64,000 nucleotides of DNA from Podarcis gaigeae (Eukaryota): the NCBI GenBank assembly GCA_964106915.2, contig OZ066917.1; one strand, given 5' to 3'. The stretch's first letter is position 1. Every line of letters begins with the position of its first letter. The translations under genes and the position numbers were made by a program. Of this stretch, positions 2,844 to 64,000 are shown one piece after another. The notes beneath the pieces are model-generated. The model was not told the origin of the DNA and ran no database searches. It was given only the letters and a program-made list of their open reading frames with translations.

Positions 2844-3665
2844 CATTGGGCATGTATCCTGAATCAACCAACCTGATTGCTGATTCATCACTTCATCAGG
2901 GTCAACCCCAAGTTAAGGATCTCCATATGGTGCACAACAAATATGGGTGACCCTTCCAGGACACTATTAAAGGTAAGGTAAAGGGACCCCTGACCATTAG
3001 GTCCAGTCGTGGTCGACTCTGGGGTTGCGGCGCTCATCTCGCTTTATTGGCTGAGGGAGCAGGCGTAGAGCTTCTTGGTCATGTGTCTAGCATGACTAAG
3101 CCACTTCTGGAGATACAGAGCAGTGCACGGAAACGCTGTTTACCTTCCCGCCGGAGCTGTACCAATTTATCTACTTGCACTTTGACGTGCTTTCGAACTG
3201 CTAGGTGGGCAGGAGCAGGGACCAAGCAACGAGAGCTCACCCCGTTGCGGGGATTTGAACCGCTGACTTTCTGATCGGCAAATCCTAGGCTTTGTGGTTT
3301 AACCCACAGCGCCATCCACGTCCCTCCAGGACACTATTGGGGGAGTTCTATAGCCATTAGCCCATGTCTTGGCACATGGACCCCTTTACCAGTGACCCCG
3401 ATACTATGATCCAGAGGAGGGTGGAGTCACCCCCTCCAATTAGACTAAGGATCCAACCCAATGTCTTTTCCCGCCAACAAGTTGTGACAATTTCTGTGAG
3501 CTAGGTAAAGCCCCCAAAACTGGCCTGATTGGTTTGAAGGCAAATTCCTCCCTGGCACCGAAAACGGAAACTGAGTCACTCCACATCAAGGCCATATACA
3601 CGCAGCACCTGCTTAACTTCAGGTGGGGTGAAATTTATATAAGTTGGATGGGTGGAATGTCCAAT
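2844..3665 (-). mobile_element. Decayed copy of the ENE-bearing LTR-like element, interrupted by a Sauria SINE
   Basis: The minus strand reads ATTGG, TATATAAA, GGGAGG-AATTT-GCC...GGC-TTTA-CCT, TGTCACAACTTGTTGGCGG, CATTGGG and a GGAGGGGGTG/CACCCTCC hairpin, in the same order as in the copies at 42.6 and 62.3 kb. Boundaries are approximate. Confidence 0.55.
2969..3324 (-). mobile_element. Sauria SINE (Squam1), full length
   Basis: tRNA-derived head GGGACG..GGCGCTGTGGGTTAAACCAC, (ACCTTT)n-type tail, and 14-bp TSD TCCAGGACACTATT at 2955-2968 and 3325-3338. Confidence 0.95.
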
Positions 3666-5964
3666 ACTGACTGTGCTGCTTGAAGATGGTGCAGCCAGTT
3701 TTTATGCTCAGGAGTTGAAACAGGCTTGACTCAGGTCCGTTCTCAAAGTCCTGCCCCGTATTCTGGCCAATTCCAATACAAAAGTAGGAGAGTCCTGCCA
3801 CTGCCTGTTGGGGTTGATGATGCTGTTAGCCAGGTACACAGAATGTTTTTTGCCACCCCCATCACCTTGCCCACTGCCAAGCGGAAGAAACAACATGGAC
3901 TTTGAGAGGGCTCCTTGGTAAAATGCCTGTTGGTAGGCCTCCTATGTCAGTGGACTTCCCTGGCAGGATTACCTGGCAACATGTGGGTGGGACTGGGTCT
4001 GGCTCATTAGAACCCGATAGGAGAAAGTGAAGTTTCAGCATGTGATGTGCTGGGGTGCTGAGCCTTCGAAGGGTCTCAAGAAGATCATGGGCAGGCTCAT
4101 ATAGAGATAAGTGATAAACTTTGTCCCAAGTCCTCACCAGGCAGTGCTTCTGCTTGTATTGCAAATGAAGAGTCATGAAGACACAGGACATGAAAAGGCA
4201 TGGGGGTCTTCTTCAATCATGCATTTCCTAGTGGCTTTTCTCCTTACATTTCTATTTGTCTCAGTTCCTGGGTTTTCTATCTCGTGCAACCAGTGGTGCC
4301 CACAGAGATCTTCAACAGTTATTTTCATGAGCACAGTAGAACTTTTGTGGAGATGGTATGTGCGTGAGAATTACTTTTGATTACAAAAATCACTTGGTAA
4401 GTGTATCATCATGGCTCCAGTTCACACAGTGCTTTTCTGCATGTGATCAGGTGCATAAATGAACCCAGGAAAGACTGGATGTAAAACAACAGCAGCAGCA
4501 ACAACAACAACAACCAAGAAACAGAATAAGGCTCATGTGAATTGGCCTCTAGATTTCGGCTACTGTCTGAGAGGATCTTAATTGCACTGAAATCTAGTGA
4601 CAGGCTTTTTTCTTAGTGCTATGTTTGCTTCCATATTTTAATACACAACACTTAAGGAAATGATGTAAACGAGCCTTAACAAGAGAGAAGGGAGCATATA
4701 TTTGAATTAATAAAGCACATTAAATAAAATCTGGTTTAGACTCTGTCATGAAAGAGCTAATTGCCACAGTCCACAATTCTACAATTCTTCTATAGACTTT
4801 CAGAGGAATAAAGTAAAAATTGTTACTACTGTTGAAAATTGTAATACAGAAATTTCAGGGAGTTAGTAGCAGTGAATGCAATCATGGTCCCTAAATTATT
4901 ACTCTAGTCTTACAAGTGGAGTGTACTATTAAGGCAAGGCATGTTGATTTTATGCATTATTATTTATAAAAATATTTTTATACTCCCATCGTATAACTTA
5001 TCAAGGCAGTGTATAGCAATACATCTGTGCAATGAAACAGAAATCACCACTGAAAACAGTACAAATCAAATGAATGGCTAATCAAAAGGTATTCAACAGA
5101 TGCCTAAAAGTCAAAGTATTCCACAGGATGTTACCAATAAAACATGTAAGAGGGAAAGGTGGGGAGGGGGGATAGATAAGGGCAGGTAGGGGTTAAAGGT
5201 CAAGATGATAGCAGTACCTTGTAGTTCACAGTGTTATTCCAAATATCAAGCCTAGAAATATTACTATTGCTGGCTACACATCCAGTTTATACAATGCCTC
5301 TAACCTACCAGCAGAAAGCTATTAAAAACAAATTTGCACACATTAAGAAGCTGGAATAATTCAGTAAATGTTATTGGGTGGACCTAAGCTCAGCAAATGA
5401 ATCATTCAAACAGGTTACTATTTAAAGTTGCACACAGTTATTTTCTTATTTGCTTCCCCCCTTTTTTCTTTCTTTTTTCTAAAAAAAGAACCCTTCTTTT
5501 TACTGTAAAAAGCTTAATCTGTTTATTCACTTTTCACTGGACAAAGCACTGTTTCAATGCTATGCTGCTGTGTTTGGCAGAGTTACAATTACATCATTAG
5601 AGCAGCAGTGCTAAGAAGAACATTAAACCCTTTCAGATCCTTAGCTCTTCAGTACCTTTCATGCCAGCAGGCAATATTAATTAAATTCTTTTTTAAAAAA
5701 AGCCCAGTATCTGGTTTAAATTGTATTATAAGAAGTACTAGGAAATGTGATTGTAGTCTCAGAAAAGTTCTTGGTTCCGGGACTGAACACAGAACTGAGA
5801 AGCTGTGAAGTCCGGAGGGGGATATTCATGGTAATGATGCTACTTGTTTTCTGTACAAGCTGCTAACAATCCTTCCTGTACTTTGACCCATGTAAAAGAA
5901 TGCTAATTTAAATAGCTCTTCTCCTTGAAATATTTGGATTAGGCTGTACGTTAGGGTAGAATTA

Positions 5965-6310
5965 GGGACGCGGGTGGTGCTGTGGTCTAAACCACTGAGC
6001 CTAGGGCTTGCCGATTGGAAGGTTGGTGGTTTGAATCCCCGCCACGGGGTGAGCTCCCGTTGCTCGGTCCCAGCTCCTGCCAACCTAGCAGTTCAAAAGC
6101 ACCTCAAAGTGCAAGTAGATAAATAGGTTCCACTCCGGCAGGAAGGTATACGGTGTTTCCGTGCAGCGAGTTATTCATGCTGGCCACATGACCCGGAAAA
6201 ACTGTCTGCAGACAAACACCGGCTCCTTTGGCTAGTAAAGCAAGATGAGTGCCACAACCCCAGAGTCATTTGCAACTGGACTTAACTGTCAGGGGTCCTT
6301 TACCTTTTTA
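5965..6310 (+). mobile_element. Sauria SINE, variant subfamily
   Basis: Head GGGACGCGGGTGGTGCTGTGGTCTAAACCACTGAGC, tail CAGGGGTCCTTTACCTTTT, and 12-bp TSD AGGGTAGAATTA at 5953-5964 and 6311-6322. Confidence 0.95.
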
Positions 6311-12333: not shown

Positions 12334-12472
12334 NNNNNNNNNNNNNNNNNNNNNNNNNNNNNNNNNNNNNNNNNNNNNNNNNNNNNNNNNNNNNNNNNNN
12401 NNNNNNNNNNNNNNNNNNNNNNNNNNNNNNNNNNNNNNNNNNNNNNNNNNNNNNNNNNNNNNNNNNNNNNNN
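12334..12472. other. Assembly gap (139 N)
   Basis: Run of N adjoining the 3' end of an L2 copy. Confidence 0.99.
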
Positions 12473-13099
12473 TCTGGCTGGGCTTCCCCAGCCACTCTGG
12501 GCGGCTTCCAACAAAATATTAAAATACAGTAATGCATCAAACATTAAAAGCTTCTCTAAACAGGGCTGCCTTCATATGTCTTCTAAAAGTGTGGTAGTAG
12601 TTGTTCTCTTTGACATCTGGTGGGAGGGCGTTCCACAGGGCGGGTGCCACTACCGAGAAGCCCTCTGCCTGGTTCCCTGTAACTTGGCTTCTTGCAGTGA
12701 GGGAACCGCCAGAAGGCCCTTGGCACTGGACCTCCGTGTCTGGGCAGAACGATGGGGGTGGAGACACTCCTTCAGATATACAGGACCGAGGCCGTTTAGG
12801 GCTTTAAAGGTCAGCAGCAGTTGTGCTCGGAAATGTACTGGGAGCCAATGTACGGTAGGTCTTTCAAGACTGGTGTTATGTGGTCTTGGTGGCTGCTCCC
12901 AGTCACCAGTCTAGCTGCCACATTCTGGATTAGTTGTAGTTTCTGGGTCACCTTCAAAGGTAGCCCCACATAGAGCACATTGCAGTAGTCCAAGTGAGAG
13001 ATAACCAGAGCATGCACCACTCTGGCGAGACAGTCCGCGGGCAGATAGGGTCTCAGCCTGCGTAAAAGATGGAGCTGGTAAACAGCTGCCCTGGACACA
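12473..13099 (-). mobile_element. L2-clade LINE 3' fragment (RT C-terminus)
   Basis: ORF remnants YQLHLLRRLRPYL..LVISHLDYCNVLYVGLPLK..KLQLIQNVAARLVTG..DHITPVL and FSVVAPALWNALP. Confidence 0.9.
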
Positions 13100-17650: not shown

Positions 17651-17831
17651 AAAGGCCAGATTCCCCGAATTGAGATCACACTTAGGTGTAATACCGCTGA
17701 GTGAAAATTGTAGCATTTTCTCCACAATAACTTTTGGTGGTTCTTTGAAAACCATGTGGCCACGTCCATGAAAAGCACTATTCTACCACCCTAACAGTCA
17801 TGGATTCCCATAAAGAATTCTGTGAACTGTA

Positions 17832-18510
17832 CCTTTGAAGGTGACTCAGAAACTACAACTAATCCACAATGTGGCTGCCGGACTGTTGACTGGGAGCAGC
17901 CACTGGGACCATATAAGACCAGTCCATTAGCTCACAGTATGTTTCCGAGAACAATTCAAAGTTTTGGTGCTGACCTTTAAAGCTCTAAACGGCCTCGGTC
18001 CTGTATACCTGAAGGAGCGTTTCCACCCCCATTGTTCAGCCCAGACACTGAGGTCCAGCTCTGATGGCCAGTGGCGCAGCGTGGGGGGTGCAGGGGGGGC
18101 CGGCCACACCGGGCGCAACATCTGGGGGTTAGGGTTAGGGGGTGCAAATCCACGGGTTAGGGGGCGCAAATCCATGGGTTAAGGGGTGCAAATTACTTGC
18201 CTTGCCCCGGGTGCTGACAACCCATGCTACGCCACTGCTGACGGCCTTCTGGCGGTTCCCTCACTGCAAAAAGTGAGGTTACAGGGAACCAGGCAGAGGG
18301 TCTTCTTGGTGGTGGCACCCGACCTTTAGAATGTTGCCTTCCCATCAGATGTTGAGGAAATAAGCAACTATCTGACTTTTAGAAGACATCTGAAGGTAGC
18401 CCTGTATAGAGAAGTTTTTAATGTTTGGTGTCTTACTGCATTTTAATTTGTTGGAAGCTGCCCAAGTGGCTCGGCAACTCAATCAGGTGGGTGGCATATA
18501 AATTGTTGTT
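17832..18510 (+). mobile_element. L2-clade LINE 3' end with a nested hAT MITE
   Basis: Remnant VLTFKALNGLGPVYLKER; the L2 resumes at 18238 with CTTCTGGCGGTTCCCTCACTG...CAGAGGG. Confidence 0.9.
18069..18237. mobile_element. hAT-type MITE with internal 22-bp TTAGGG-containing repeats
   Basis: TIRs CAGTGGCGCAGCGTGGG / CCCATGCTACGCCACTG. 8-bp TSD CTGATGGC (18061-18068) / CTGACGGC (18238-18245). Confidence 0.9.

Positions 18511-27979: not shown

Positions 27980-28026
<47 letters not shown>
27980..28026. repeat. (TA)n microsatellite, left flank of the palindrome
   Basis: Directly visible. Confidence 0.95.
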
Positions 28027-28029
<3 letters not shown>

Positions 28030-28080
28030 GGTTTTGGTGTCCTCGGGTGTCTTCCCGTGTAAAAGTTGGGGTGTCTAGGC

Positions 28081-28114
28081 GACGTTTCGACGAGGTCTCA
28101 CTCGTCATCTTCAG
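28081..28114 (-). ncRNA. Minimal type I hammerhead ribozyme motif (mirror copy)
   Basis: Exact reverse complement of 28928-28961. Confidence 0.7.
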
Positions 28115-28927
28115 GCTGGTGCTTTCGGCTTCTTGTTACTGGAACAGAGCGGGATCTCAATGTTTGAGTTCCTATAAATACTGTAGAGGGGGTGTGGTGT
28201 CTAGCCTCCAATGTTCTGGGCAGAGAGGAAGTTCCCAGGCTAGTGTGCCTTTTCTTCTTTTGTTCCTTAATTACTTGAGAGATACCTTGAGTGATTTCTT
28301 GAGTGATATCCTGAGTACCACTTAGGTGGGTCATTAGGTGTGGATTAGTTGCTAAAGTCTTTGTGTCTTGACCTCTTGAACTTTGTGAAGAGTTTTCCTG
28401 AGAAGATGGCTGTATTGCACTTAGTTGTGCTTTGGCTTGGCTTCGTGTATAGGGGCGAGCTGTGGTTTTGTGGCTTGTGTCAGCCAGATCTGTGTAGGGA
28501 TTGCAGGGGGGTGCAGCATCCGGTGCTGCACCCCCCTGCAATCCCTACACAGATCTGGCTGACACAAGCCACAAAACCACAGCTCGCCCCTATACACGAA
28601 GCCAAGCCAAAGCACAACTAAGTGCAATACAGCCATCTTCTCAGGAAAACTCTTCACAAAGTTCAAGAGGTCAAGACACAAAGACTTTAGCAACTAATCC
28701 ACACCTAATGACCCACCTAAGTGGTACTCAGGATATCACTCAAGAAATCACTCAAGGTATCTCTCAAGTAATTAAGGAACAAAAGAAGAAAAGGCACACT
28801 AGCCTGGGAACTTCCTCTCTGCCCAGAACATTGGAGGCTAGACACCACACCCCCTCTACAGTATTTATAGGAACTCAAACATTGAGATCCCGCTCTGTTC
28901 CAGTAACAAGAAGCCGAAAGCACCAGC

Positions 28928-28961
28928 CTGAAGATGACGAGTGAGACCTCGTCGAAACGTC
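28928..28961 (+). ncRNA. Minimal type I hammerhead ribozyme motif
   Basis: CUGAAGA-U-[GACGAG ugagac CUCGUC]-GAAAC-GUC: both core boxes, a 6-bp helix II, and a self-complementary ACGU in place of helix III. Confidence 0.7.
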
Positions 28962-29044
28962 GCCTAGACACCCCAACTTTTACACGGGAAGACACCCGAG
29001 GACACCAAAACCTGCATTCCTGTACCCGTGAAAATCTACGAAAG

Positions 29045-29047
<3 letters not shown>

Positions 29048-29086
<39 letters not shown>
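29048..29086. repeat. (TA)n microsatellite, right flank of the palindrome
   Basis: Directly visible. Confidence 0.95.
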
Positions 29087-29090
<4 letters not shown>

Positions 29091-31146: not shown

Positions 31147-31509
31147 AAAAGGTATAAGTACCCCTGCCCGTCCGGTCCAGTCGTGACCGACTCTGGGGTT
31201 GCGCGCCCATCTCGCTTAAGAGGCCAGGGGCCAGCGCTGTCCGAGGAAACTTCCGGGTCACGTGGCCAGCGTGACGAAGCTGCACTGGCGAGCCGGCACC
31301 AGCGCAGCACACGGAAACGCCGTTTACCTTCCCGCTATAAAGCGGTACCTATTTATTTACTTGCACTTAATTGTGCTTTCGAACTGCTAGGTGGGCAGGA
31401 GCTGGGACCGAAGACGGGAGCTCACCCCGCCGCGGGGATTTGAACCGCCGACCATACGATCGGCAAGTCCTAGGCACTGAGGTTTTACCCACAGCGCCAC
31501 CCGCGTCCC
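31147..31509 (-). mobile_element. Sauria SINE, CpG-rich (young) subfamily
   Basis: Head variant GGTAAAACCTCAGTGCCTAGG. 11-bp TSD GCCATTCCTTA at 31136-31146 and 31511-31521. Confidence 0.93.
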
Positions 31510-31696
31510 TGCCATTCCTTAGCACTTCTTTAATTCCTTGTGCTTTATTCATTTTACAACTAACTTCAAGGCATAAGGGTGCACTTGCAAATCAGAAAAG
31601 CTTGTCAGAAAGCCAGACATGTAAGCTATGCACTTAGGACCAAACCACCTTTTACATATGTTAAAGAAATACATTATTACATTTTCAAATGCAAAT

Positions 31697-35334: not shown

Positions 35335-35662
35335 TGGCGCTGTGGGTTAAATCACAGAGCCTAGGACTTGCTGATCAGAAGGTCAGCGGTTCGAATCCCT
35401 GCGACAGGGTGAGCTCCCGTTGCTCGGTCCCTGCTCCTGCCAACCTAGCAGTTTGAAAGCATGTCAAAGTGCAAGTAGATACCTTACTGGTGGGAAGGTA
35501 AATGGCATTTCCGTGCGCTGCTCTGGTTCGCCAGAAGCAGCTTAGTCATGCTGGCCACATGACCCGGAAGCTGTACACTGGCTCCCTCGGCCTATACAGC
35601 GAGATGAGCACCGCAACCCCAGAGTTGGCCACGACTGGTCAGGGGTCCCTTTACCCTTACCT
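35335..35662 (+). mobile_element. Sauria SINE, slightly 5'-truncated
   Basis: TGGCGCTGTGGGTTAAATCACAGAGCC...CAGGGGTCCCTTTACCCTTACCT. Confidence 0.92.
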
Positions 35663-37691: not shown

Positions 37692-37960
37692 CTAGTATAC
37701 CTGAAAGAGCACCTCCACCCCCATAGTTCAGCCTGGACACTGAGATCCAGTTCCGAAGGCCTTCTGGCGGTTCCCTCACCATGAGATGTGAGGTTACAAG
37801 GAACCAGGCAGAGGGCCTTCTCGGTAGTGGTGCCCGCCCTGTGGAACGCCCTCCTATCAGATGTTGAGGAGATAAACAACTAGCTGACTTTTAGAAGACA
37901 TCAGAAAGCAGCCCTGTTTAGGGAAGTTTTTAATGTTTGATTTTTTATTGTGTGTTGTTG
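37692..37960 (+). mobile_element. L2-clade LINE 3' fragment
   Basis: CAGAGGGCCTTCTCGGTAGTGGTGCCCGCCCTGTGGAACGCCCTCC, closely similar to the 46.6 kb and 12.6 kb copies. Confidence 0.9.
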
Positions 37961-37989
37961 TTTTGAAGGTATCTCAAAGGGATTTGGTA

Positions 37990-39047: not shown

Positions 39048-39403
39048 AAGGTAAAGGTAAAGGGACCCCTGACCATTAGGTCCAGTTGTGACCGACTCTG
39101 GGATTGCGGTGCTCATCTCGCTTTATTGGCCGCGGGAGCCAGCGTACAGCTTCTGGGTGATGTGGCCAGCATGACTAAGCCACTTCTGGCGAACCAGAGC
39201 AGTGCACAGAAATGCCATTTACCTTCCCACTGGAGCTGTATCTATTTATCTACTTGCACTTTGACATGCTTTCAAACTGCTAGGTTGGCAGGAGCAGGGA
39301 CCGAGCAACAGGAGCTCACCCCGTTGCAGGGATTCGAACCGCCGACCTTCTGATCGGCAAGTCCTAGGCTCTGTGGTTTAACCCACAGCACCACCCGTGT
39401 CCC
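39048..39403 (-). mobile_element. Sauria SINE, full length
   Basis: 13-bp TSD AAAATATGACATA at 39035-39047 and 39406-39418. Confidence 0.95.
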
Positions 39404-39553
39404 TTAAAATATGACATACTAAGGTGCAAATTTAAGAAAATAAGAGGTGTGACTCGTAAAAGACATATTTAGCTAAGTCACTGTGCTAGCAGAAGCCAGT
39501 GCGATGATTCTTAGCAGTGCAGTGGGACTTCCCCCCGCTCTCCTCCCCAAAAC

Positions 39554-42556: not shown

Positions 42557-43270
42557 TTGCGTGGCGATTCCCTCCCCATCCCAAGAAGAGTAAATAAAGA
42601 CACTGGACACCAAATTTAAGGTTAATGGGCGAAAATGGCCACAACTTTATTGATTACAGGTAAGAGCGGTATTGGCTTTTAGGCATTGGCCCTACCAGAC
42701 TATCCGGTCTAACCGGGAAGGGTTAAGCACCAACCGGGGGAGCCCCCGAGATGCACATCCCTAGGCACTCCCCGAGGGGGTTACCGCTCAGGAGCGCGCT
42801 TTAGGCCCTAGCCTTCGTAGGTTTCGGACGAGGCGACGCCCCCCGGAGTCCTTTAACGAACTACCCTTCAAGCTTTGGGGGAGGTGATGGCGTTCCTCCC
42901 CCCCGACCTCATTTCCATAACAGTACCCCTGCCAATGCCTAACCGCCAAAACCAGGAGTTGTGACGTTTTGCTAAGAGGTAGGCGAAAAAACCAAGTGGC
43001 TATAAAATACAGCCAATTAAGCCAAATGGAAAAACTCCTACCCGGCCCCATGCGGCGACCAGCCGAAGCCCATAGCAAAGTCAAATGCAAACCTAGAGGG
43101 CGGGTGGGTGGGAAACCGCTGCAGCTGTGAGAACGAAAAGGGGGCGAGCCAGGGCTGAGGGGCGGTGAATATTGATGAGCTTGGGGAATCCCTGCTTCTC
43201 ACGGGGCTGACGCAAGCCCCGCGAGATTGCTGATGGGGTCATGAGCCCGCAACCCCACCCCCTCTTAAGA
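42557..43270 (-). mobile_element. LTR-like element carrying an ENE-like motif (possibly a DIRS/Ngaro-type terminal repeat)
   Basis: On the minus strand: ENE-like motif at 42978-43042, AATAAA at 42646-42651 inside CTGTAATCAATAAAGTTGTGGCC (identical to 62986-63008), and a CGCAA end. No TG..CA termini or TSD seen. Confidence 0.75.
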
Positions 43271-43371
43271 TCAGGAGTGGCTTTTCCTGTATGTCATCTG
43301 ATTCATCTGTGTAACAATCTTGTAAGGTAAGGCAGCCATTTATTCCCATAATGCAGATGTGGAGCTGAAGC

Positions 43372-45448: not shown

Positions 45449-45804
45449 TAAAGGTAAAGGTAAAGGGACCCCGACCATTAGGTCCAGTCGTGGACGACTT
45501 TGGGGTTGCGGCGCTCATCTCACTTTATTGGCCAAGGGAGCCGGCGTACAGCTTCCAGGTCATGTGGCCAGCATGACTAAGCCGCTTCTGGCAAACCAGA
45601 GCAGCGCATGGAAACGTCGTTTACCTTCCTGCTGGAGTGGTACCTATTTATTTACTTGCACTTTGACATGCTTTCGAACTGCTAGGTTGGCAGGAGCAGA
45701 AACCAAGCAACGGGAGCTCACCCCATGGGGGGGATTTGAACCACGACCTTCTGATTGGTAAGTCCTAGGCTCTGTGGTTTAACCCACAGCGCCACCCGCG
45801 TCCC
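45449..45804 (-). mobile_element. Sauria SINE, full length
   Basis: Canonical head and tail. Imperfect TSD CTATGCCAACAGTA / CTATACCAACTGTA. Confidence 0.95.
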
Positions 45805-46588
45805 TCTATACCAACTGTAGATGCATCCTTTTATCATGTCATGCTGCTATGCAAGGGAGAGTAGGTTCCAGTGTCTAGTCATTCAAGGTCAAATTCATAG
45901 GTTTTTGAAGTCAGTGGAAGGTGCGCTCTGGGCTTTGGAGAGAAACAGTAGCACAAGGGTTTGCAATTTCAATGGACGACATAAACAAGCAATATGCAAG
46001 TAAGTACAGGGAAGGAAAGATGGATGGAATGTGACAGCAGAAACAGTATGACAGCAGTGAAACACAATGCTTGCAGCTTTAGTGGCCCCATGGTGTTTGT
46101 TTACATTTTACTATTTTATTAAGAGCCAAGATTCTACAGTGAATCCCCCAAAGTCCAAACTTGGAGAAGATAAAACATTATTTTAATGCTTACCAGAAAC
46201 CTGAAGGCTTTTAGCCAGTGCACTGTGACGGAAATATGTAGTCTTACAATCCCATCTGATTTTGTTGCCATAAATATATTGTCTGAGTAAATAAAACGTT
46301 TTGACTCCTGAAGATATTAAGCAATGAATTTGATCTCATTGCCAGTACAAATATTAGGACACGGACAAAGCCGTGCCTTATGTTACTTTCCGCGAATATG
46401 GCATTGCTCAGAAGAGCAAGGAAAACTGAGGTTTTATATTTTCCTGTGATTTGGTCAAACAGAATAGTCTAGTTGTAAATCAGCCAGAAAGACCGGAAAG
46501 CAAGTGAACTGAAACCTACTTGCACAGAGTTGGACTGCTAAATCATCAGCATTATCCTTTCCAATTAGACAGGCATACTTGCTGCAAG

Positions 46589-46805
46589 ACAGAGGGCCTT
46601 CTCGGTAGCGGCGCCCGCCCTGTGGAACGCCCTCCCATCAGATGTCAAAGAGATAAAGAATTACCTGACGTTCAGAAGACATCTTAAGGCAGCCCTGTTC
46701 AGGGAAGTTTTTAATATGTAATGCTGTACGGTTTTTAACACTGATTGGGAGCCGCCCAGAGTGGCTGGGGAAAACTCAGCCAGATGGGCGGGGTATAAAT
46801 AATAA

Positions 46806-60585: not shown

Positions 60586-60653
60586 GTTGGAGTCCAACAT
60601 TTGGAGGACCACAAATTCCCCATCACACTGTTTCAAGAAGTGTGAATTAGGTA

Positions 60654-61007
60654 AGGTAAAGGTAAAGGGGCCCTTGACCATTAGGTCCAGTCGTGACCGA
60701 CTCTGGGGTTGAGGCGCTCATCTCGCTTTATTGGCTGAGGGAACCGGTGTGGAGCTTCCGGGTCATGTGGCCAGCATGACTAAGCTGCTTCTAGCGAACC
60801 AGAGCAGCACACAGAAATGCCATTTACCTTCCCGCCAGAGTGGTACCTATTTATCTACTTGCACTTTGACATGCTTTCAAACTGCTAGGTTGGCAGAAGC
60901 AGGGACTGAGCAATGGGAGCTCACCCTGTCACGGGGATTCAAACCGCCGACCATCTGATCAGCAAGTCCTAGGCTCTGTGGTTTAACCCACAGCGCCACC
61001 CACGTCC
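60654..61007 (-). mobile_element. Sauria SINE, full length
   Basis: 13-bp TSD TGTGAATTAGGTA at 60641-60653 and 61008-61020. Confidence 0.95.
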
Positions 61008-61159
61008 TGTGAATTAGGTAGGTTTGCATTAAAAAGTGAACAAAAACAAATTTCTTCCCTATCCCTACTTGTGTCCATGTACACACAGGGAGAGAGACAC
61101 CCAGCTAATAACTGCATTCCAACAACTCATTTCTGCTGGACTTTCCTTGACTTCTGCAA

Positions 61160-61490: not shown

Positions 61491-62434
61491 GTGTAAGGAA
61501 ATGAGAGCTGGTGCATATGTTCACACTCGATTTTCTTTTCTTTTCTTTTTTAAAGCACGCCAAACTCTCCCTGAAAAGTAAAAAGAGAAATAAAGTTGAT
61601 TTATCAGGGATACAACTTTCAGAAGAGGTAGTCATTTTAGTCCGCTTCTGGAAAAACAACAAATAATTTTGGTGTGTCTTAAAAATGAACACATTTACTA
61701 AATTATCATGGACTAAAGTCCATTTTATAAGACATAAGTACTAGAAGACAGAGCCTGCCCTTATAAATTAGGACAGTTGGAATATATAAAGCAGCCATTT
61801 TGAAATTACTTGTCAAGGTGCTATAATGGAACTTTAATGGCTCCATGAAATGTTAACTTTCTGGGACATTTTTAAAAACCTGCTCTTTTTTCTTGATTCA
61901 GGACATAAAGTCTGCTTCTTAACCATTTCTAGAAAAAAATATAATATGCTCAGTAAATCAAACAACATTTGTGTAGATCACTAAGAACATTTGTGTACAT
62001 TTCTCTCACTTTGTTTCAGCTCTTGTTGCTACAGAAGTTTGTTCCAATTGAGAAAAAGGTGCTTGTTCAGATATTCCTGCTGTTGTCATGTATAAGTTTG
62101 CACACCTTGAGCTTCATTGTTGAATGCTTTATGCTATAACCATGCAAGGTGAGTCAGCCAGCAATTTTAATTTCCTTTGCAGTTTGTGGCTCTTGTTTCC
62201 TTCCTCATCACAACTATATTGGGTGCTATGTACAGTGCATTAGTTCCGTGCCCTTGTTTATCTAATTACTAGTTAAGACAATTGCATTGTTTTATAGAAG
62301 CTACAAATGGGATCGTCTTTAACGAGCATCCTGGTTGCGCATGGGCCCCTGAGACAACCCCTGCCAGGTCGAAGGTGCTGGGCGTGGCCCAGGCCTTGTC
62401 TGTATGGTCCCACAATCACACCAGGCCATTTGAG

Positions 62435-62475
62435 CCAATCACTGCAGGTGGCGTGATTGGTGGGGGCCTATAAAA
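62435..62475 (+). promoter_or_regulatory. Pol II core promoter (two CCAAT boxes plus TATA) within the LTR-like element
   Basis: AGCCAATC, GATTGG and CCTATAAAA lie within 41 bp. Confidence 0.6.
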
Positions 62476-62993
62476 TCGGCAGCGCAACGTGGCTGAGGCA
62501 CTTGCTTTGCGCTGCCGAGCACCCTCCCTCCCCTCCCTCTTTGTAGATGTTGCTGCTTTGGCCTTGCTTCAGATATTGGCTGGTTGCCTGTTTTAGAACA
62601 GGGGCCGGATAGGAATTTTTCCATTTGGCAAATTGGCAGTGGCCACTTGGTTTTCACCTACCCCCTTAGCAACTGTCACAACTTTGTAAGGTTAGGCGGT
62701 TAGGCATTGGCTTAATGAAGTGTGTGGGAGGGGAGGTGCGGCCATCACCTGCCCCTCCATGAATAAGGGCATCCCAGTAAAGGAATCTGGGGTCCTGGAT
62801 CTCGTCTGAAGTCTGCTTGAGGGGCCAGGGCCATGCCAGGACCACAGGAACCCCGGGGTGAGCTTCGGTTGATCTTCATTGATGTTGCTCCCTCGTTTGG
62901 TGTTTACCCTTTCAGACTGCCAGCCAGAGGGGCAGGAGGCAGTTATAGTCTGTTGCCAATGCCTAAGCCAATACCACTCACTTTGCTGTAATC

Positions 62994-62999
62994 AATAAA
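62994..62999 (+). terminator. Polyadenylation signal AATAAA of the LTR-like element
   Basis: Lies in a 23-nt block conserved in the 42.6-kb copy and is followed by T/GT-rich sequence. Confidence 0.6.
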
Positions 63000-64000
63000 G
63001 TTGTGGCCTAAATTTTGCCCATTAACATAAACCAAAATTATTTGTCAGTGTAAAGTTATTTACTTGGGGAAGGGATTGGGGGCCTTGGGGCGCAACCACA
63101 ATCTTAATATACAAACCAACAGGCAACTGGCAAGGTCTCAAGGGGGGCAGCTCATCCTGAAAAGGGTTCCAAACACAAAGATTGAGATCTGGATTTAGAA
63201 ACCCTTTGTGCAATGAACTGGGTTCTTTTAGACTCAGCAGATCACATACCAGCTCAGGAGCATGTTACCTTGGGTGTTAGCCATATGCATTCCTGCAGGC
63301 CACATTGTATGTTCTACAGTGAATGCCTAAAGAGGACACTTAATTGGTAATATGCCCCAAAGTTCCATAAATATGCTTAGGATTGCACTGTTGAACCTAT
63401 TTTGTCACAAATGAAATATTATGCTTTATTTGAAAAAAAAACCCCACAGAATTCTTTTTAAAAATGTATTCTTAACTTTTTCATCTTAGATCCATTAAAA
63501 GAAATTGTGGTCTCAGCCTTAGACAACAAAGAAATAAATGCAGGAACTGCCTACCCTGAAAACGAATGTTTAAGGTTCCTCTAAGATGATCTTTGTAGAA
63601 ATGTTATAAATAACTGGAAATTCAACAAAAGCAGGGGATGTGGGAAGAAGTCAAGTAGTGGTCACAAATGTAAGACTTGAGGAGGAGAAAGCACTAATGT
63701 ACAAAAATAAAGCACTTAAAAAACAAACAAAAATAAGAAGCTCTAAAAGCAAGGATTCTTAGTCAACCACAAGCGTTTCTAAGCTTTGTACTAGATGAAA
63801 AGAAGAGTATTCTTGAGGAAAAAGCCTGCCATTGTCATGTTCAGTATTGTTTCAACCCAAGAAAAATACTTCGGGAATCAAAACAGGGTGACATTTAAAA
63901 TAAATAACTTTGGATTCTGCATAGACTATATTAAAAGAAAATATTTTGGGGAGCTGAAAAGGCTTAGTTTGTATAAAGCTGAATTACAACAATGTGTGGA

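What the first reader, a model, noticed from the sequence alone, without database searches (positions are those of the whole stretch)
62601..62662. ENE-like (poly(A) triple-helix) motif conserved in a lizard LTR-like element family
Seen: this copy reads GGAUAGG-AA-UUUUU-CCAUUUGGC..GCCACUUGG-UUUU-CA-CCUACC. The minus-strand copy at 42978-43042 reads GGUAGG-AG-UUUUU-CCAUUUGGC..GCCACUUGG-UUUUUU-CG-CCUACC. Both have a G-C-rich lower stem, two opposed U-tracts and a CCA/UGG-closed upper stem, and the motif is far better conserved than the surrounding sequence. Established: this is the architecture of the ENE of KSHV PAN RNA and of MALAT1/NEAT1, where the U-rich internal loop clamps an A-tract or poly(A) tail in a U-A.U triple helix and blocks decay. 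ENEs in transposon RNAs have been reported mainly in plants and fungi. Inference: a vertebrate retroelement family may stabilise its RNA with an ENE, and its solo copies could spread RNA-stability elements through the genome.
Basis: partly seen in the sequence, partly recalled or inferred. Interest (0 to 1): 0.85.

Follow-up and report, generated by a model that had tools for sequence, protein, structure and literature searches.

The report
ENE-like hairpin in lizard solo LTRs
Two old, very diverged copies of a lizard LTR share an almost unchanged 57-66 nt segment that can be drawn as a poly(A)-clamping "ENE" hairpin. That fold is not the predicted one, shows no compensatory changes and scores weakly against real ENEs, so it is a reasonable but unproven candidate.

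Summary
The motif is present as described, at 62607-62662 (+) and 42978-43043 (-). A loose ENE descriptor finds only these two sites in the window, against 0.06 expected, and it also recovers two genuine herpesvirus PAN ENEs.

Both copies lie in a 760-810 bp repeat. Copy B (43316-42558, minus strand) has TG..CA ends and a 5-bp target duplication, AAGAT, so it is a solo LTR. The copies align only over about 530 bp at 65% identity. Within that, the stems and U-tracts are 46/49 identical. The poly(A)-signal block is equally conserved.

Evidence against an ENE:
- The predicted fold in both copies is two adjacent hairpins. ENE closing-pair probability is 0.01 (A) and 0.12-0.33 (B), versus 0.997 for the KSHV control.
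- No pair covaries.
- The two A/G differences on stem strands break ENE pairs in copy A but keep the rival hairpin.
- A model built from two real PAN ENEs gives copy B 9.7 bits (E about 7) and misses copy A.

Rfam has no hit, but it also misses the real PAN ENE. No further copies could be fetched, so covariation stays untested.

First-stage notes report the same motif in other LTRs of this genome; I could not check them. My probability that this is a working poly(A) clamp is about 0.3.

The parts
62607..62662 (+). ENE-like motif, copy A: lower stem 62607-62613/62657-62662, U5 62616-62620, upper stem 62621-62629/62642-62650, U4 62651-62654. Positions 62609 and 62615 are A where copy B has G, which gives A.C mismatches in the ENE drawing. 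62656 is A where B has G; B's CG here reads CA in A.
42978..43043 (-). ENE-like motif, copy B, the better-preserved copy: lower stem 43043-43037/42983-42978, G-C closing pair 43035/42985, U5 43034-43030, upper stem 43029-43021/43000-42992, U6 42991-42986, 20-nt apical loop 43020-43001.
62604..62645 (+). Competing fold in copy A: hairpin 1 (62604-62629, with three G.U pairs) and hairpin 2 (62634-62645). This is the predicted minimum-energy structure in both copies. In copy B, hairpin 2 is lengthened to 8 bp by a self-complementary insertion.
42558..43316 (-). Solo LTR, copy B, 759 bp. It starts TG and ends CA. The 5-bp direct repeat AAGAT flanks it at 43321-43317 and 42557-42553. It is the only TG..CA pair with a flanking repeat of at least 4 bp in the range searched.
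62288..63094 (+). LTR copy A, about 807 bp, ends approximate and no convincing target duplication. It contains a CCAAT box at 62435, an inverted CCAAT at 62456 and TATAAAA at 62469-62475. Its CpG content is depleted (observed/expected 0.35, against 0.67 in B).
62700..62711 (+). 5' arm of a 12-bp perfect long-range inverted repeat, identical in copy B at 42942-42931. It contains an inverted GCCAAT box.
62955..62966 (+). 3' arm of the long-range inverted repeat, identical in copy B at 42690-42679. It contains a GCCAAT box. Arm spacing is 243 nt in A and 240 nt in B.
62994..62999 (+). AATAAA inside a 23-nt block identical in both copies (B: 42651-42646), followed by a GT-rich stretch. This is the inferred poly(A) signal, 331 nt (A) and 326 nt (B) downstream of the motif.

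Best explanation
The motif is a selectively maintained cis-element in the part of an LTR that ends up at the 3' end of the element's RNA, upstream of the conserved AATAAA. The most likely single mechanism is an ENE-type clamp. In the 3' copy of the LTR, the segment would refold from its two-hairpin ground state into one long hairpin. The opposed U5 and U4-6 tracts, closed by a C-G pair above and a G-C pair below, would then take up part of the poly(A) tail as U.A-U triples and slow deadenylation and decay.

The 12-bp long-range helix (62700-62711 with 62955-62966) would shorten the path from the clamp to the poly(A) site to about 90-100 nt.

Shown here: the sequence, its architecture, its local conservation, the LTR context and the sense orientation. 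Inferred: transcription, the position of the RNA ends, the refolding, and any binding of poly(A).
For: - The architecture is present in both copies and is rare by chance in the window: 2 found against 0.06 expected. The same descriptor recovers real ENEs.
- Copy B aligns over the whole PAN ENE model. It is the only window hit that uses both stems and both U-tracts.
- Stems plus U-tracts are 46/49 identical between LTRs that are otherwise about 59% identical, with unalignable 5' parts.
- Copy A has lost CpGs: at 12 sites B has CG where A has TG or CA, and there are none the other way. Its three G-to-A differences in the motif can therefore be decay after insertion. One of them is a CpG site.
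- In full-length context, the ENE closing pairs have probability 0.33-0.35 in copy B with no triplex energy added. The ENE fold is only 1.8-3 kcal/mol above the minimum.
- The geometry is conserved between copies. Motif to 5' helix arm is 35 vs 33 nt, arm spacing is 243 vs 240 nt, and 3' arm to AATAAA is 27 vs 27 nt.
- ENEs embedded in LTRs, and ENEs in fish retroviruses, are on record. An LTR-retrotransposon ENE has been shown to block deadenylation (PMC12501189).
Against: - The ENE fold is not the predicted fold in either copy. Two hairpins win. The ENE closing-pair probability is 0.007-0.009 (A) and 0.12-0.33 (B), against 0.997 for the KSHV control.
- No pair covaries. The two A/G differences on stem strands break ENE pairs in copy A but stay paired (A-U versus G.U) in hairpin 1.
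- The conserved GGGGCC flank and the conserved AATTGGC in the 'apical loop' are not explained by an ENE.
- Copy A lacks the lower G-C closing pair and has only U4. Copy B has an A.G mismatch directly under that pair.
- The model of genuine ENEs gives 9.7 bits (E about 7) for B and nothing for A.
- The motif is about 330 nt from AATAAA, against about 95 nt in PAN RNA.
- At 0.06 per 128 kb scanned, a few chance ENE-shaped sites are expected among all repeat families of a genome.
- Only two copies were available.
Confidence: 0.3

Rival explanations
1. The segment is a structured RNA element that works in its predicted two-hairpin form and has nothing to do with poly(A). Hairpin 1 (62604-62629) and hairpin 2 (62634-62645) would lie about 100 nt downstream of the likely start site in the R or leader part of the LTR. 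They would act as retroviral R-region hairpins do, in transcription, poly(A)-site control, packaging or translation. The ENE shape would be coincidental.
For: - This is the minimum-energy fold in both copies and in the RNAalifold consensus. Hairpin 1 has probability 0.64-0.97.
- Both A/G differences in hairpin 1 keep pairing, as A-U versus G.U.
- The 7-8 nt insertion in copy B is self-complementary and lengthens hairpin 2 from 4 to 8 bp.
- It explains the conserved GGGGCC flank and the conserved second TTGGC.
- The G.U pairs make hairpin 1 specific to the sense strand.
Against: - It leaves the fully conserved 3' part (62646-62662, including the second U-tract and the lower-stem strand) without a partner, unless it pairs further downstream.
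- z-scores of the isolated segment are modest: -0.8 (A) and -2.2 (B).
- No compensatory double change supports it either.
Confidence: 0.27
2. The block is conserved as DNA. It would be a cluster of transcription-factor sites in the LTR, and the RNA fold would be irrelevant.
For: - Conservation is at the level of exact sequence, not structure. There are no covarying pairs despite about 40% divergence elsewhere.
- All four CCAAT pentamers of copy B are of the GCCAAT form and sit at homologous positions in copy A (62632, 62706, 62956, 62968). One is inside the ENE 'apical loop' and two form the arms of the 'long-range helix'.
- Copy A has 8 CCAAT pentamers against 3.3 expected (P about 0.02).
- From my own knowledge: the 5' U-tract lies in a GGA-N-TTTTTCC string that resembles ETS, NFAT or Rel-type sites, and retroviral LTRs do carry factor sites downstream of the start site.
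Against: - A 12-bp perfect inverted repeat with spacing kept to within 3 nt is more than two CCAAT boxes require.
- In copy B the sense strand folds better than the antisense: z -2.4 versus -1.6, and -163 versus -139 kcal/mol.
- No motif library was available to score factor sites, so those site names rest on memory only.
Confidence: 0.23
3. There is no function of its own. An ENE-shaped string arose by chance in one LTR lineage. The patchy identity would reflect recombination or gene conversion between LTR lineages, or alignment of a mosaic.
For: - The chance rate of 0.06 per 64-kb window (both strands) predicts on the order of a thousand such sites per gigabase, and a few among repeat consensus sequences (inference).
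- Only two copies were seen.
- The model score is not significant.
Against: - Several separate short blocks of near-identity (20-70 nt) alternate with almost unalignable sequence within 500 bp. This pattern fits selection better than exchange of one tract.
- The three substitutions in the motif's stems and spacers, and the 2-nt difference in U-tract length, are within what decay of copy A alone would give (inference).
- Unchecked first-stage notes report the motif in further diverged LTRs of this genome.
Confidence: 0.15

Closest known systems
KSHV PAN RNA ENE and the related rhadinovirus ENE (fetched here as L051:4285-4351 and L053:832-898)
   Same: A single hairpin with a U5 tract on each side of a G/C-closed upper stem, a 2-nt spacer on the 3' side and a G/C-rich lower stem. 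It lies on the sense strand upstream of an AATAAA.
   Different: - The real ENEs fold as ENEs by minimum free energy. The KSHV closing pair has probability 0.997, against 0.01-0.33 for the lizard motif.
- The PAN ENE lies about 95 nt before AATAAA; the lizard motif lies about 330 nt before it.
- The lizard lower stem has an extra 5' spacer and an A.G (B) or A.A plus A.C (A) interruption.
- The similarity score is 9.7 bits, not significant.
ENEs and double ENEs of plant and fungal transposable elements, including ENEs embedded in LTRs (Tycowski 2016 as described in PMC7583470 and PMC13541005), and the Evade/Copia93 ENE (PMC12501189)
   Same: A U-rich internal-loop hairpin carried by an LTR retroelement RNA. 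Flanking G-C pairs are needed. A-minor stems interrupted by a bulge or internal loop are tolerated in the lower domain of double ENEs.
   Different: - Those elements have experimental or covariation support, and most plant ones are double-domain.
- Evade's ENE lies between the ORF and the 3' LTR.
- The lizard motif is single-domain, untested, and in a vertebrate.
ENEs of stickleback fish retroviruses (listed in PMC7583470)
   Same: This is a vertebrate retroelement with a predicted poly(A)-clamping element, so it is the nearest precedent by host and element type.
   Different: I could not read the primary paper. Position and sequence could not be compared.
MALAT1 / MEN-beta ENE plus A-rich tract
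   Same: U-rich internal loop in a hairpin.
   Different: Those ENEs need a genomically encoded A-rich tract and a tRNA-like RNase P site just downstream, and their U-tracts are interrupted by C and G. Neither feature is present after the lizard motif. It is not a member.
R-region hairpins of retroviral LTRs (HIV-1 TAR and poly(A) hairpins; the HTLV-1 Rex-responsive stem that spans the distance to the poly(A) site). From my own knowledge.
   Same: Conserved stable hairpins in the transcribed LTR part, and a long-range helix that shortens the distance to the 3'-processing site.
   Different: There is no sequence similarity, and those elements have no opposed U-tracts. This is the model for the rival two-hairpin reading.

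Membership tests
ENE (poly(A)-clamping triple-helix element) | Hairpin with an internal loop made of two opposed U-tracts (about 5 U each) | tested here: met
   Copy B has U5 and U6; copy A has U5 and U4.
ENE (poly(A)-clamping triple-helix element) | G-C pairs directly flanking the U-rich loop on both sides (needed for triplex and A-minor contacts; PMC12501189, PMC7583470) | tested here: inconclusive
   The upper C-G pair is present in both copies. The lower G-C pair is present in B, followed by an A.G mismatch. In A it is replaced by A.C.
ENE (poly(A)-clamping triple-helix element) | The ENE hairpin is the stable fold of the segment | tested here: not met
   The minimum-energy fold is two hairpins in both copies. 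The ENE fold is 1.8-3.0 kcal/mol higher. Closing-pair probability is 0.007-0.009 (A) and 0.12-0.33 (B). The KSHV and L053 controls fold as ENEs. Triplex energy is not modelled.
ENE (poly(A)-clamping triple-helix element) | Stems supported by compensatory changes across homologues | tested here: inconclusive
   Only two copies were available. 15 of 17 pairs are identical and 2 are broken in the decayed copy A. There are no double changes.
ENE (poly(A)-clamping triple-helix element) | Lies in the 3' part of a polyadenylated RNA, or just upstream of an A-rich tract, on the sense strand | tested here: inconclusive
   It is on the sense strand relative to the conserved AATAAA, 331 (A) and 326 (B) nt upstream. 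There is no A-rich tract.
ENE (poly(A)-clamping triple-helix element) | Significant score against a covariance model of known ENEs | tested here: not met
   With model R1, built from two rhadinovirus ENEs, copy B scores 9.7 bits (E about 7) and copy A is absent at E<=10. Rfam 15 gives nothing. It also misses the genuine PAN ENE, so that blank says nothing.
ENE (poly(A)-clamping triple-helix element) | Binds oligo(A) and stabilises a reporter RNA in a U-tract-dependent way | not testable with these tools
   Bench assay.
Solo LTR of an LTR retroelement | TG..CA termini and a 4-6 bp target-site duplication | tested here: met
   Copy B spans 43316-42558 with TG..CA ends and AAGAT on both sides. 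It is the only candidate of at least 4 bp in the searched range. For copy A only 4-bp chance-level candidates were found.
Solo LTR of an LTR retroelement | Promoter elements, then a poly(A) signal with a GT-rich downstream element, inside one unit | tested here: met
   Copy A has CCAAT, inverted CCAAT and TATAAAA at 62435-62475. AATAAA is at 62994-62999 in a 23-nt invariant block followed by a GT-rich stretch. Copy B keeps the poly(A) block but not the TATA box.
Solo LTR of an LTR retroelement | A matching second LTR with primer-binding site, polypurine tract and gag/pol between them somewhere in the genome | not tested
   There is no internal region next to either copy. Other parts of the genome could not be searched.

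The most novel reading that the evidence does not exclude
The same R-region sequence acts as a context-dependent switch. At the 5' end of the retroelement RNA it sits as two hairpins. At the 3' end, the poly(A) tail, delivered by the conserved 12-bp long-range helix, captures it into an ENE-type clamp. Every nucleotide would then be constrained by two folds, which would explain why the block is invariant rather than covarying. This would be the first ENE of a reptile retroelement and the first one governed by a competing fold inside an LTR.
Probability: 0.1. Interest if true: 0.65.

Novelty: new member of a known kind. Interest (0 to 1): 0.35.

Why it matters
If it works as an ENE, it would extend poly(A)-tail clamps from plant and fungal transposons, a few viruses and fish retroviruses to an amniote LTR family. 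It would also provide a compact natural stabiliser with a built-in competing fold. Hundreds of solo LTRs carrying a promoter, a stabiliser and a poly(A) signal could affect nearby host transcripts. If it does not work as an ENE, the case is a useful caution. U-tract hairpins that match the ENE drawing occur by chance at a rate that matters on the scale of a genome. Sequence conservation alone does not distinguish an RNA clamp from a factor-binding cluster.

Tried and rejected
- **Rfam 15.** The whole window at gathering thresholds, and three sub-regions at E<=10, gave no ENE or other credible family. In the control, the genuine KSHV PAN ENE locus also gets no hit. Rfam is therefore uninformative here.
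- **More copies.** The metagenome scan with an invariant 17-mer next to the motif gave 50 loci. All match only the 17-mer, so they are chance hits. Viral-contig scans with the poly(A) block and with the motif itself gave 0. A protein search with the spurious 100-aa ORF over copy B, meant to reach other assemblies, gave nothing.
- **Earlier findings.** Look-ups returned titles only and no sequences.
- **Primary paper.** Tycowski 2016 is not held.
- **MALAT1-type ENE+A.** Rejected: there is no A-rich tract and no tRNA-like element downstream.
- **Telomerase RNA, snRNA or ribozyme identity for the unit.** Rejected: no Rfam hit.
- **AATAAA acting as the TATA box, with a very short R.** I considered this because of the two GCCAAT boxes 24-36 nt upstream. 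It is unlikely, because no second poly(A) signal is conserved downstream.
- **A possible exon at 62020-62148** with splice-like borders has stops in all three frames.

Full report
**Observation**

- Copy A occupies 62607-62662 on the + strand.
- Copy B occupies 43043-42978 on the - strand.

Each can be drawn with these parts in order:
- a 6-7 nt lower stem;
- a 2-nt spacer;
- a U5 tract;
- an upper stem of 3 bp, a 2x2 mismatch and 4 bp;
- an apical loop of 12 nt (A) or 20 nt (B);
- a second U-tract of U4 (A) or U6 (B);
- a 2-nt spacer and the closing strand of the lower stem.

No other copy exists in the window.

I wrote a descriptor after seeing the motif, so it is fitted to it. It finds only these two sites in 64 kb on both strands, against 0.06 expected in Markov simulations. 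It recovers two genuine herpesvirus ENEs. Its only other hit in about 350 kb of fetched loci is L057, a contig that an ENE-shaped search pattern had brought in. The shape is therefore real and rare locally. Scaled to a gigabase genome, the same rate predicts on the order of a thousand chance sites.

**What carries the motif**

The two copies belong to a repeat of 760-810 bp.

Copy B runs from 43316 to 42558 on the - strand. It starts TG and ends CA, and AAGAT flanks it on both sides. This is the only TG..CA pair with a flanking repeat of at least 4 bp in the range searched. That is the signature of a solo LTR.

Copy A (about 62288-63094) starts in a similar way but has no convincing target duplication. 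No gag/pol-like ORF lies beside either copy.

The copies align only from about 62531 to 63064, at 65% identity. The 5' parts cannot be aligned.
- Copy A has a CCAAT box, an inverted CCAAT box and TATAAAA at 62435-62475.
- Both copies keep AATAAA (62994-62999; 42651-42646) inside a 23-nt invariant block followed by GT-rich sequence.

Read this way, the motif lies about 100 nt after the likely start site and about 330 nt before the poly(A) signal. That is a long R region, which would be present at both ends of the element's RNA. The RNA ends are inferred, not measured.

**Conservation**

Identity along the alignment is about 40-60% in most 40-column windows. It rises to 85% at the motif and at the poly(A) block, and to 65-72% around 62670-62719, which contains the invariant 62695-62711.
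- Stems plus U-tracts are 46/49 identical.
- The motif including its indel columns is 55/71, versus 252/430 for the rest (p = 0.002).

Copy A has clearly decayed. At 12 sites B has CG and A has TG or CA, and there are none in the other direction. CpG observed/expected is 0.35 in A against 0.67 in B. In the stems and spacers the copies differ by three substitutions, all A in copy A where copy B has G. One of them is a CpG site. The second U-tract also differs by 2 nt, and the apical loops differ more. By inference, the number of differences is what decay of copy A after insertion would give.

So the block was probably nearly invariant between two lineages that otherwise diverged by about 40%. 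That argues for selection. It is selection on exact sequence, not on pairing alone.

**Tests of the ENE reading**

*Fold.* In both copies the minimum-energy structure is two adjacent hairpins, 62604-62629 and 62634-62645 in copy A. It is not the ENE hairpin, and RNAalifold on the pair chooses the same.
- The ENE fold is 1.8-3.0 kcal/mol less stable.
- The probability of its closing pair is 0.009 (A) and 0.12 (B) in isolation, and 0.007 (A) and 0.33 (B) in a 500-nt context.
- The genuine KSHV ENE gives 0.997, and both control ENEs fold as ENEs.
- Triplex energy is not modelled. An ENE conformer at one third occupancy in copy B could be pulled over by poly(A), but nothing shows that it is.

*Covariation.* There is none. 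All proposed pairs are identical except two, which are G-C in B and A.C in A. The same two positions stay paired (G.U versus A-U) in hairpin 1. The insertion in copy B is self-complementary and lengthens hairpin 2 to 8 bp.

*Model score.* Rfam has no hit. To check whether that blank means anything, I fetched the KSHV genome segment with the PAN ENE (L051). Rfam does not detect that one either.

I then built a covariance model from the KSHV ENE and a second rhadinovirus-type ENE found in a 127-kb viral contig (L053) and searched the window without filters.
- Copy B scores 9.7 bits, E about 7, third in the window.
- It is the only hit that aligns both stems and both U-tracts.
- Copy A is not reported.

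The resemblance to the PAN ENE is part-by-part but not statistically significant.

*Position.* The motif is on the sense strand upstream of AATAAA. It is 326-331 nt away, against about 95 nt in PAN RNA.

A 12-bp perfect inverted repeat (62700-62711 with 62955-62966) is identical in both copies.
- Arm spacing is 243 nt in A and 240 nt in B.
- Distances to the motif (35 and 33 nt) and to AATAAA (27 and 27 nt) are nearly the same.
- Its pairing probability in the ~500-nt fold is 0.95 in B and 0.05 in A.

**Evidence for the rivals**

The two-hairpin fold explains the conserved GGGGCC flank and the conserved second TTGGC. The ENE drawing leaves both in a flank and a loop.

A DNA-level reading also has support.
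- All four CCAAT pentamers of copy B are GCCAAT boxes kept at homologous positions in copy A.
- One is in the ENE apical loop and two are the arms of the long-range repeat.
- Copy A has 8 such pentamers against 3.3 expected (P about 0.02).

Against a purely DNA-level reading, the sense strand of copy B folds better than shuffles (z = -2.4) and better than the antisense strand. For copy A, z is only -1.0. The consensus fold beats column-shuffled alignments (z about -6 to -8), but that control is lenient.

**Comparison with what is known**

ENEs are established in several places (PMC7583470; PMC13541005; PMC12501189):
- PAN RNA and other viral RNAs;
- MALAT1 and MEN-beta;
- many plant and fungal transposable elements, some embedded in LTRs;
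- the Arabidopsis Evade element, where the clamp blocks CCR4a deadenylation;
- stickleback fish retroviruses, according to a review.

I found no paper on a reptile element. If the motif is real, it is a new member of a known kind.

**Verdict**

The functional claim is open.

| Reading | Probability |
|---|---|
| Working poly(A) clamp | about 0.30 |
| RNA element acting as two hairpins | 0.27 |
| DNA-level regulatory block | 0.23 |
| Chance or no function | 0.15 |

The deciding data are a family-wide alignment and mapped RNA ends. I could not obtain either. The public collections on hand hold no lizard copies.

First-stage notes on other pieces of this genome report the same motif in further LTRs, one of them claiming covariation (s1-663190, s1-686418, s1-686476). 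I could see only their titles, and they are not evidence here.

The differences between the copies are described only.

Noticed in passing
window 28025-29017: Perfect inverted repeat with two 494-nt arms, 100% complementary and 5 nt apart, flanked by long (TA)n runs at about 27980-28030 and 29040-29090. It could be a real palindrome or an assembly artefact.
   Followed up: no
window 2969-3325, 31148-31510, 39048-39404, 45450-45805, 60653-61009 (+); 5964-6165, 35335-35638 (-): At least seven copies of a 300-360 bp repeat, 71-95% alike. Its 3' part looks tRNA-related (it reads as the reverse complement of a T-arm and acceptor region), so it is probably a lizard SINE family.
   Followed up: no
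window 12512-12962, 17830-18453, 37695-37965, 46587-46736: A second interspersed repeat family in both orientations, 69-88% alike, not identified.
   Followed up: no
window 12334-12472: Run of 139 N (gap or masked). I left it untouched.
   Followed up: no
window 62435-63075 and 42675-43017: Four GCCAAT/ATTGGC boxes are kept at homologous positions in both LTR copies, two in each orientation. Copy A has 8 CCAAT pentamers against 3.3 expected. This suggests NF-Y-type sites, or a repeated pairing module in the RNA.
   Followed up: partly
L051:3300-4700 (KSHV genome segment, IMG/VR contig of 137,969 bp): Rfam release 15 reports no family for the genuine PAN RNA ENE, even at E<=1. A blank Rfam search therefore cannot be used against any ENE candidate.
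   Followed up: yes
L052:3284-3348 (IMG/VR contig of 213,375 bp): An ENE-shaped hairpin (U5 and U5 tracts, G/C-closed stems) lies about 15 nt upstream of a run of AATAAA-like signals in a large viral contig. It may be an undescribed viral ENE. It was found only because the search pattern was ENE-shaped.
   Followed up: no
L053:832-898 (IMG/VR contig of 127,320 bp): A clear PAN-type ENE with two compensatory pair changes in the lower stem relative to KSHV, and an AATAAA about 125 nt downstream. It is presumably a rhadinovirus PAN homologue. I used it as the second sequence of model R1.
   Followed up: partly
window 62020-62148: A stretch with a polypyrimidine/AG border and an AAG|GTGAGT border, about 140 bp upstream of LTR copy A. 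All three frames contain stops, so it is not a clean coding exon.
   Followed up: partly
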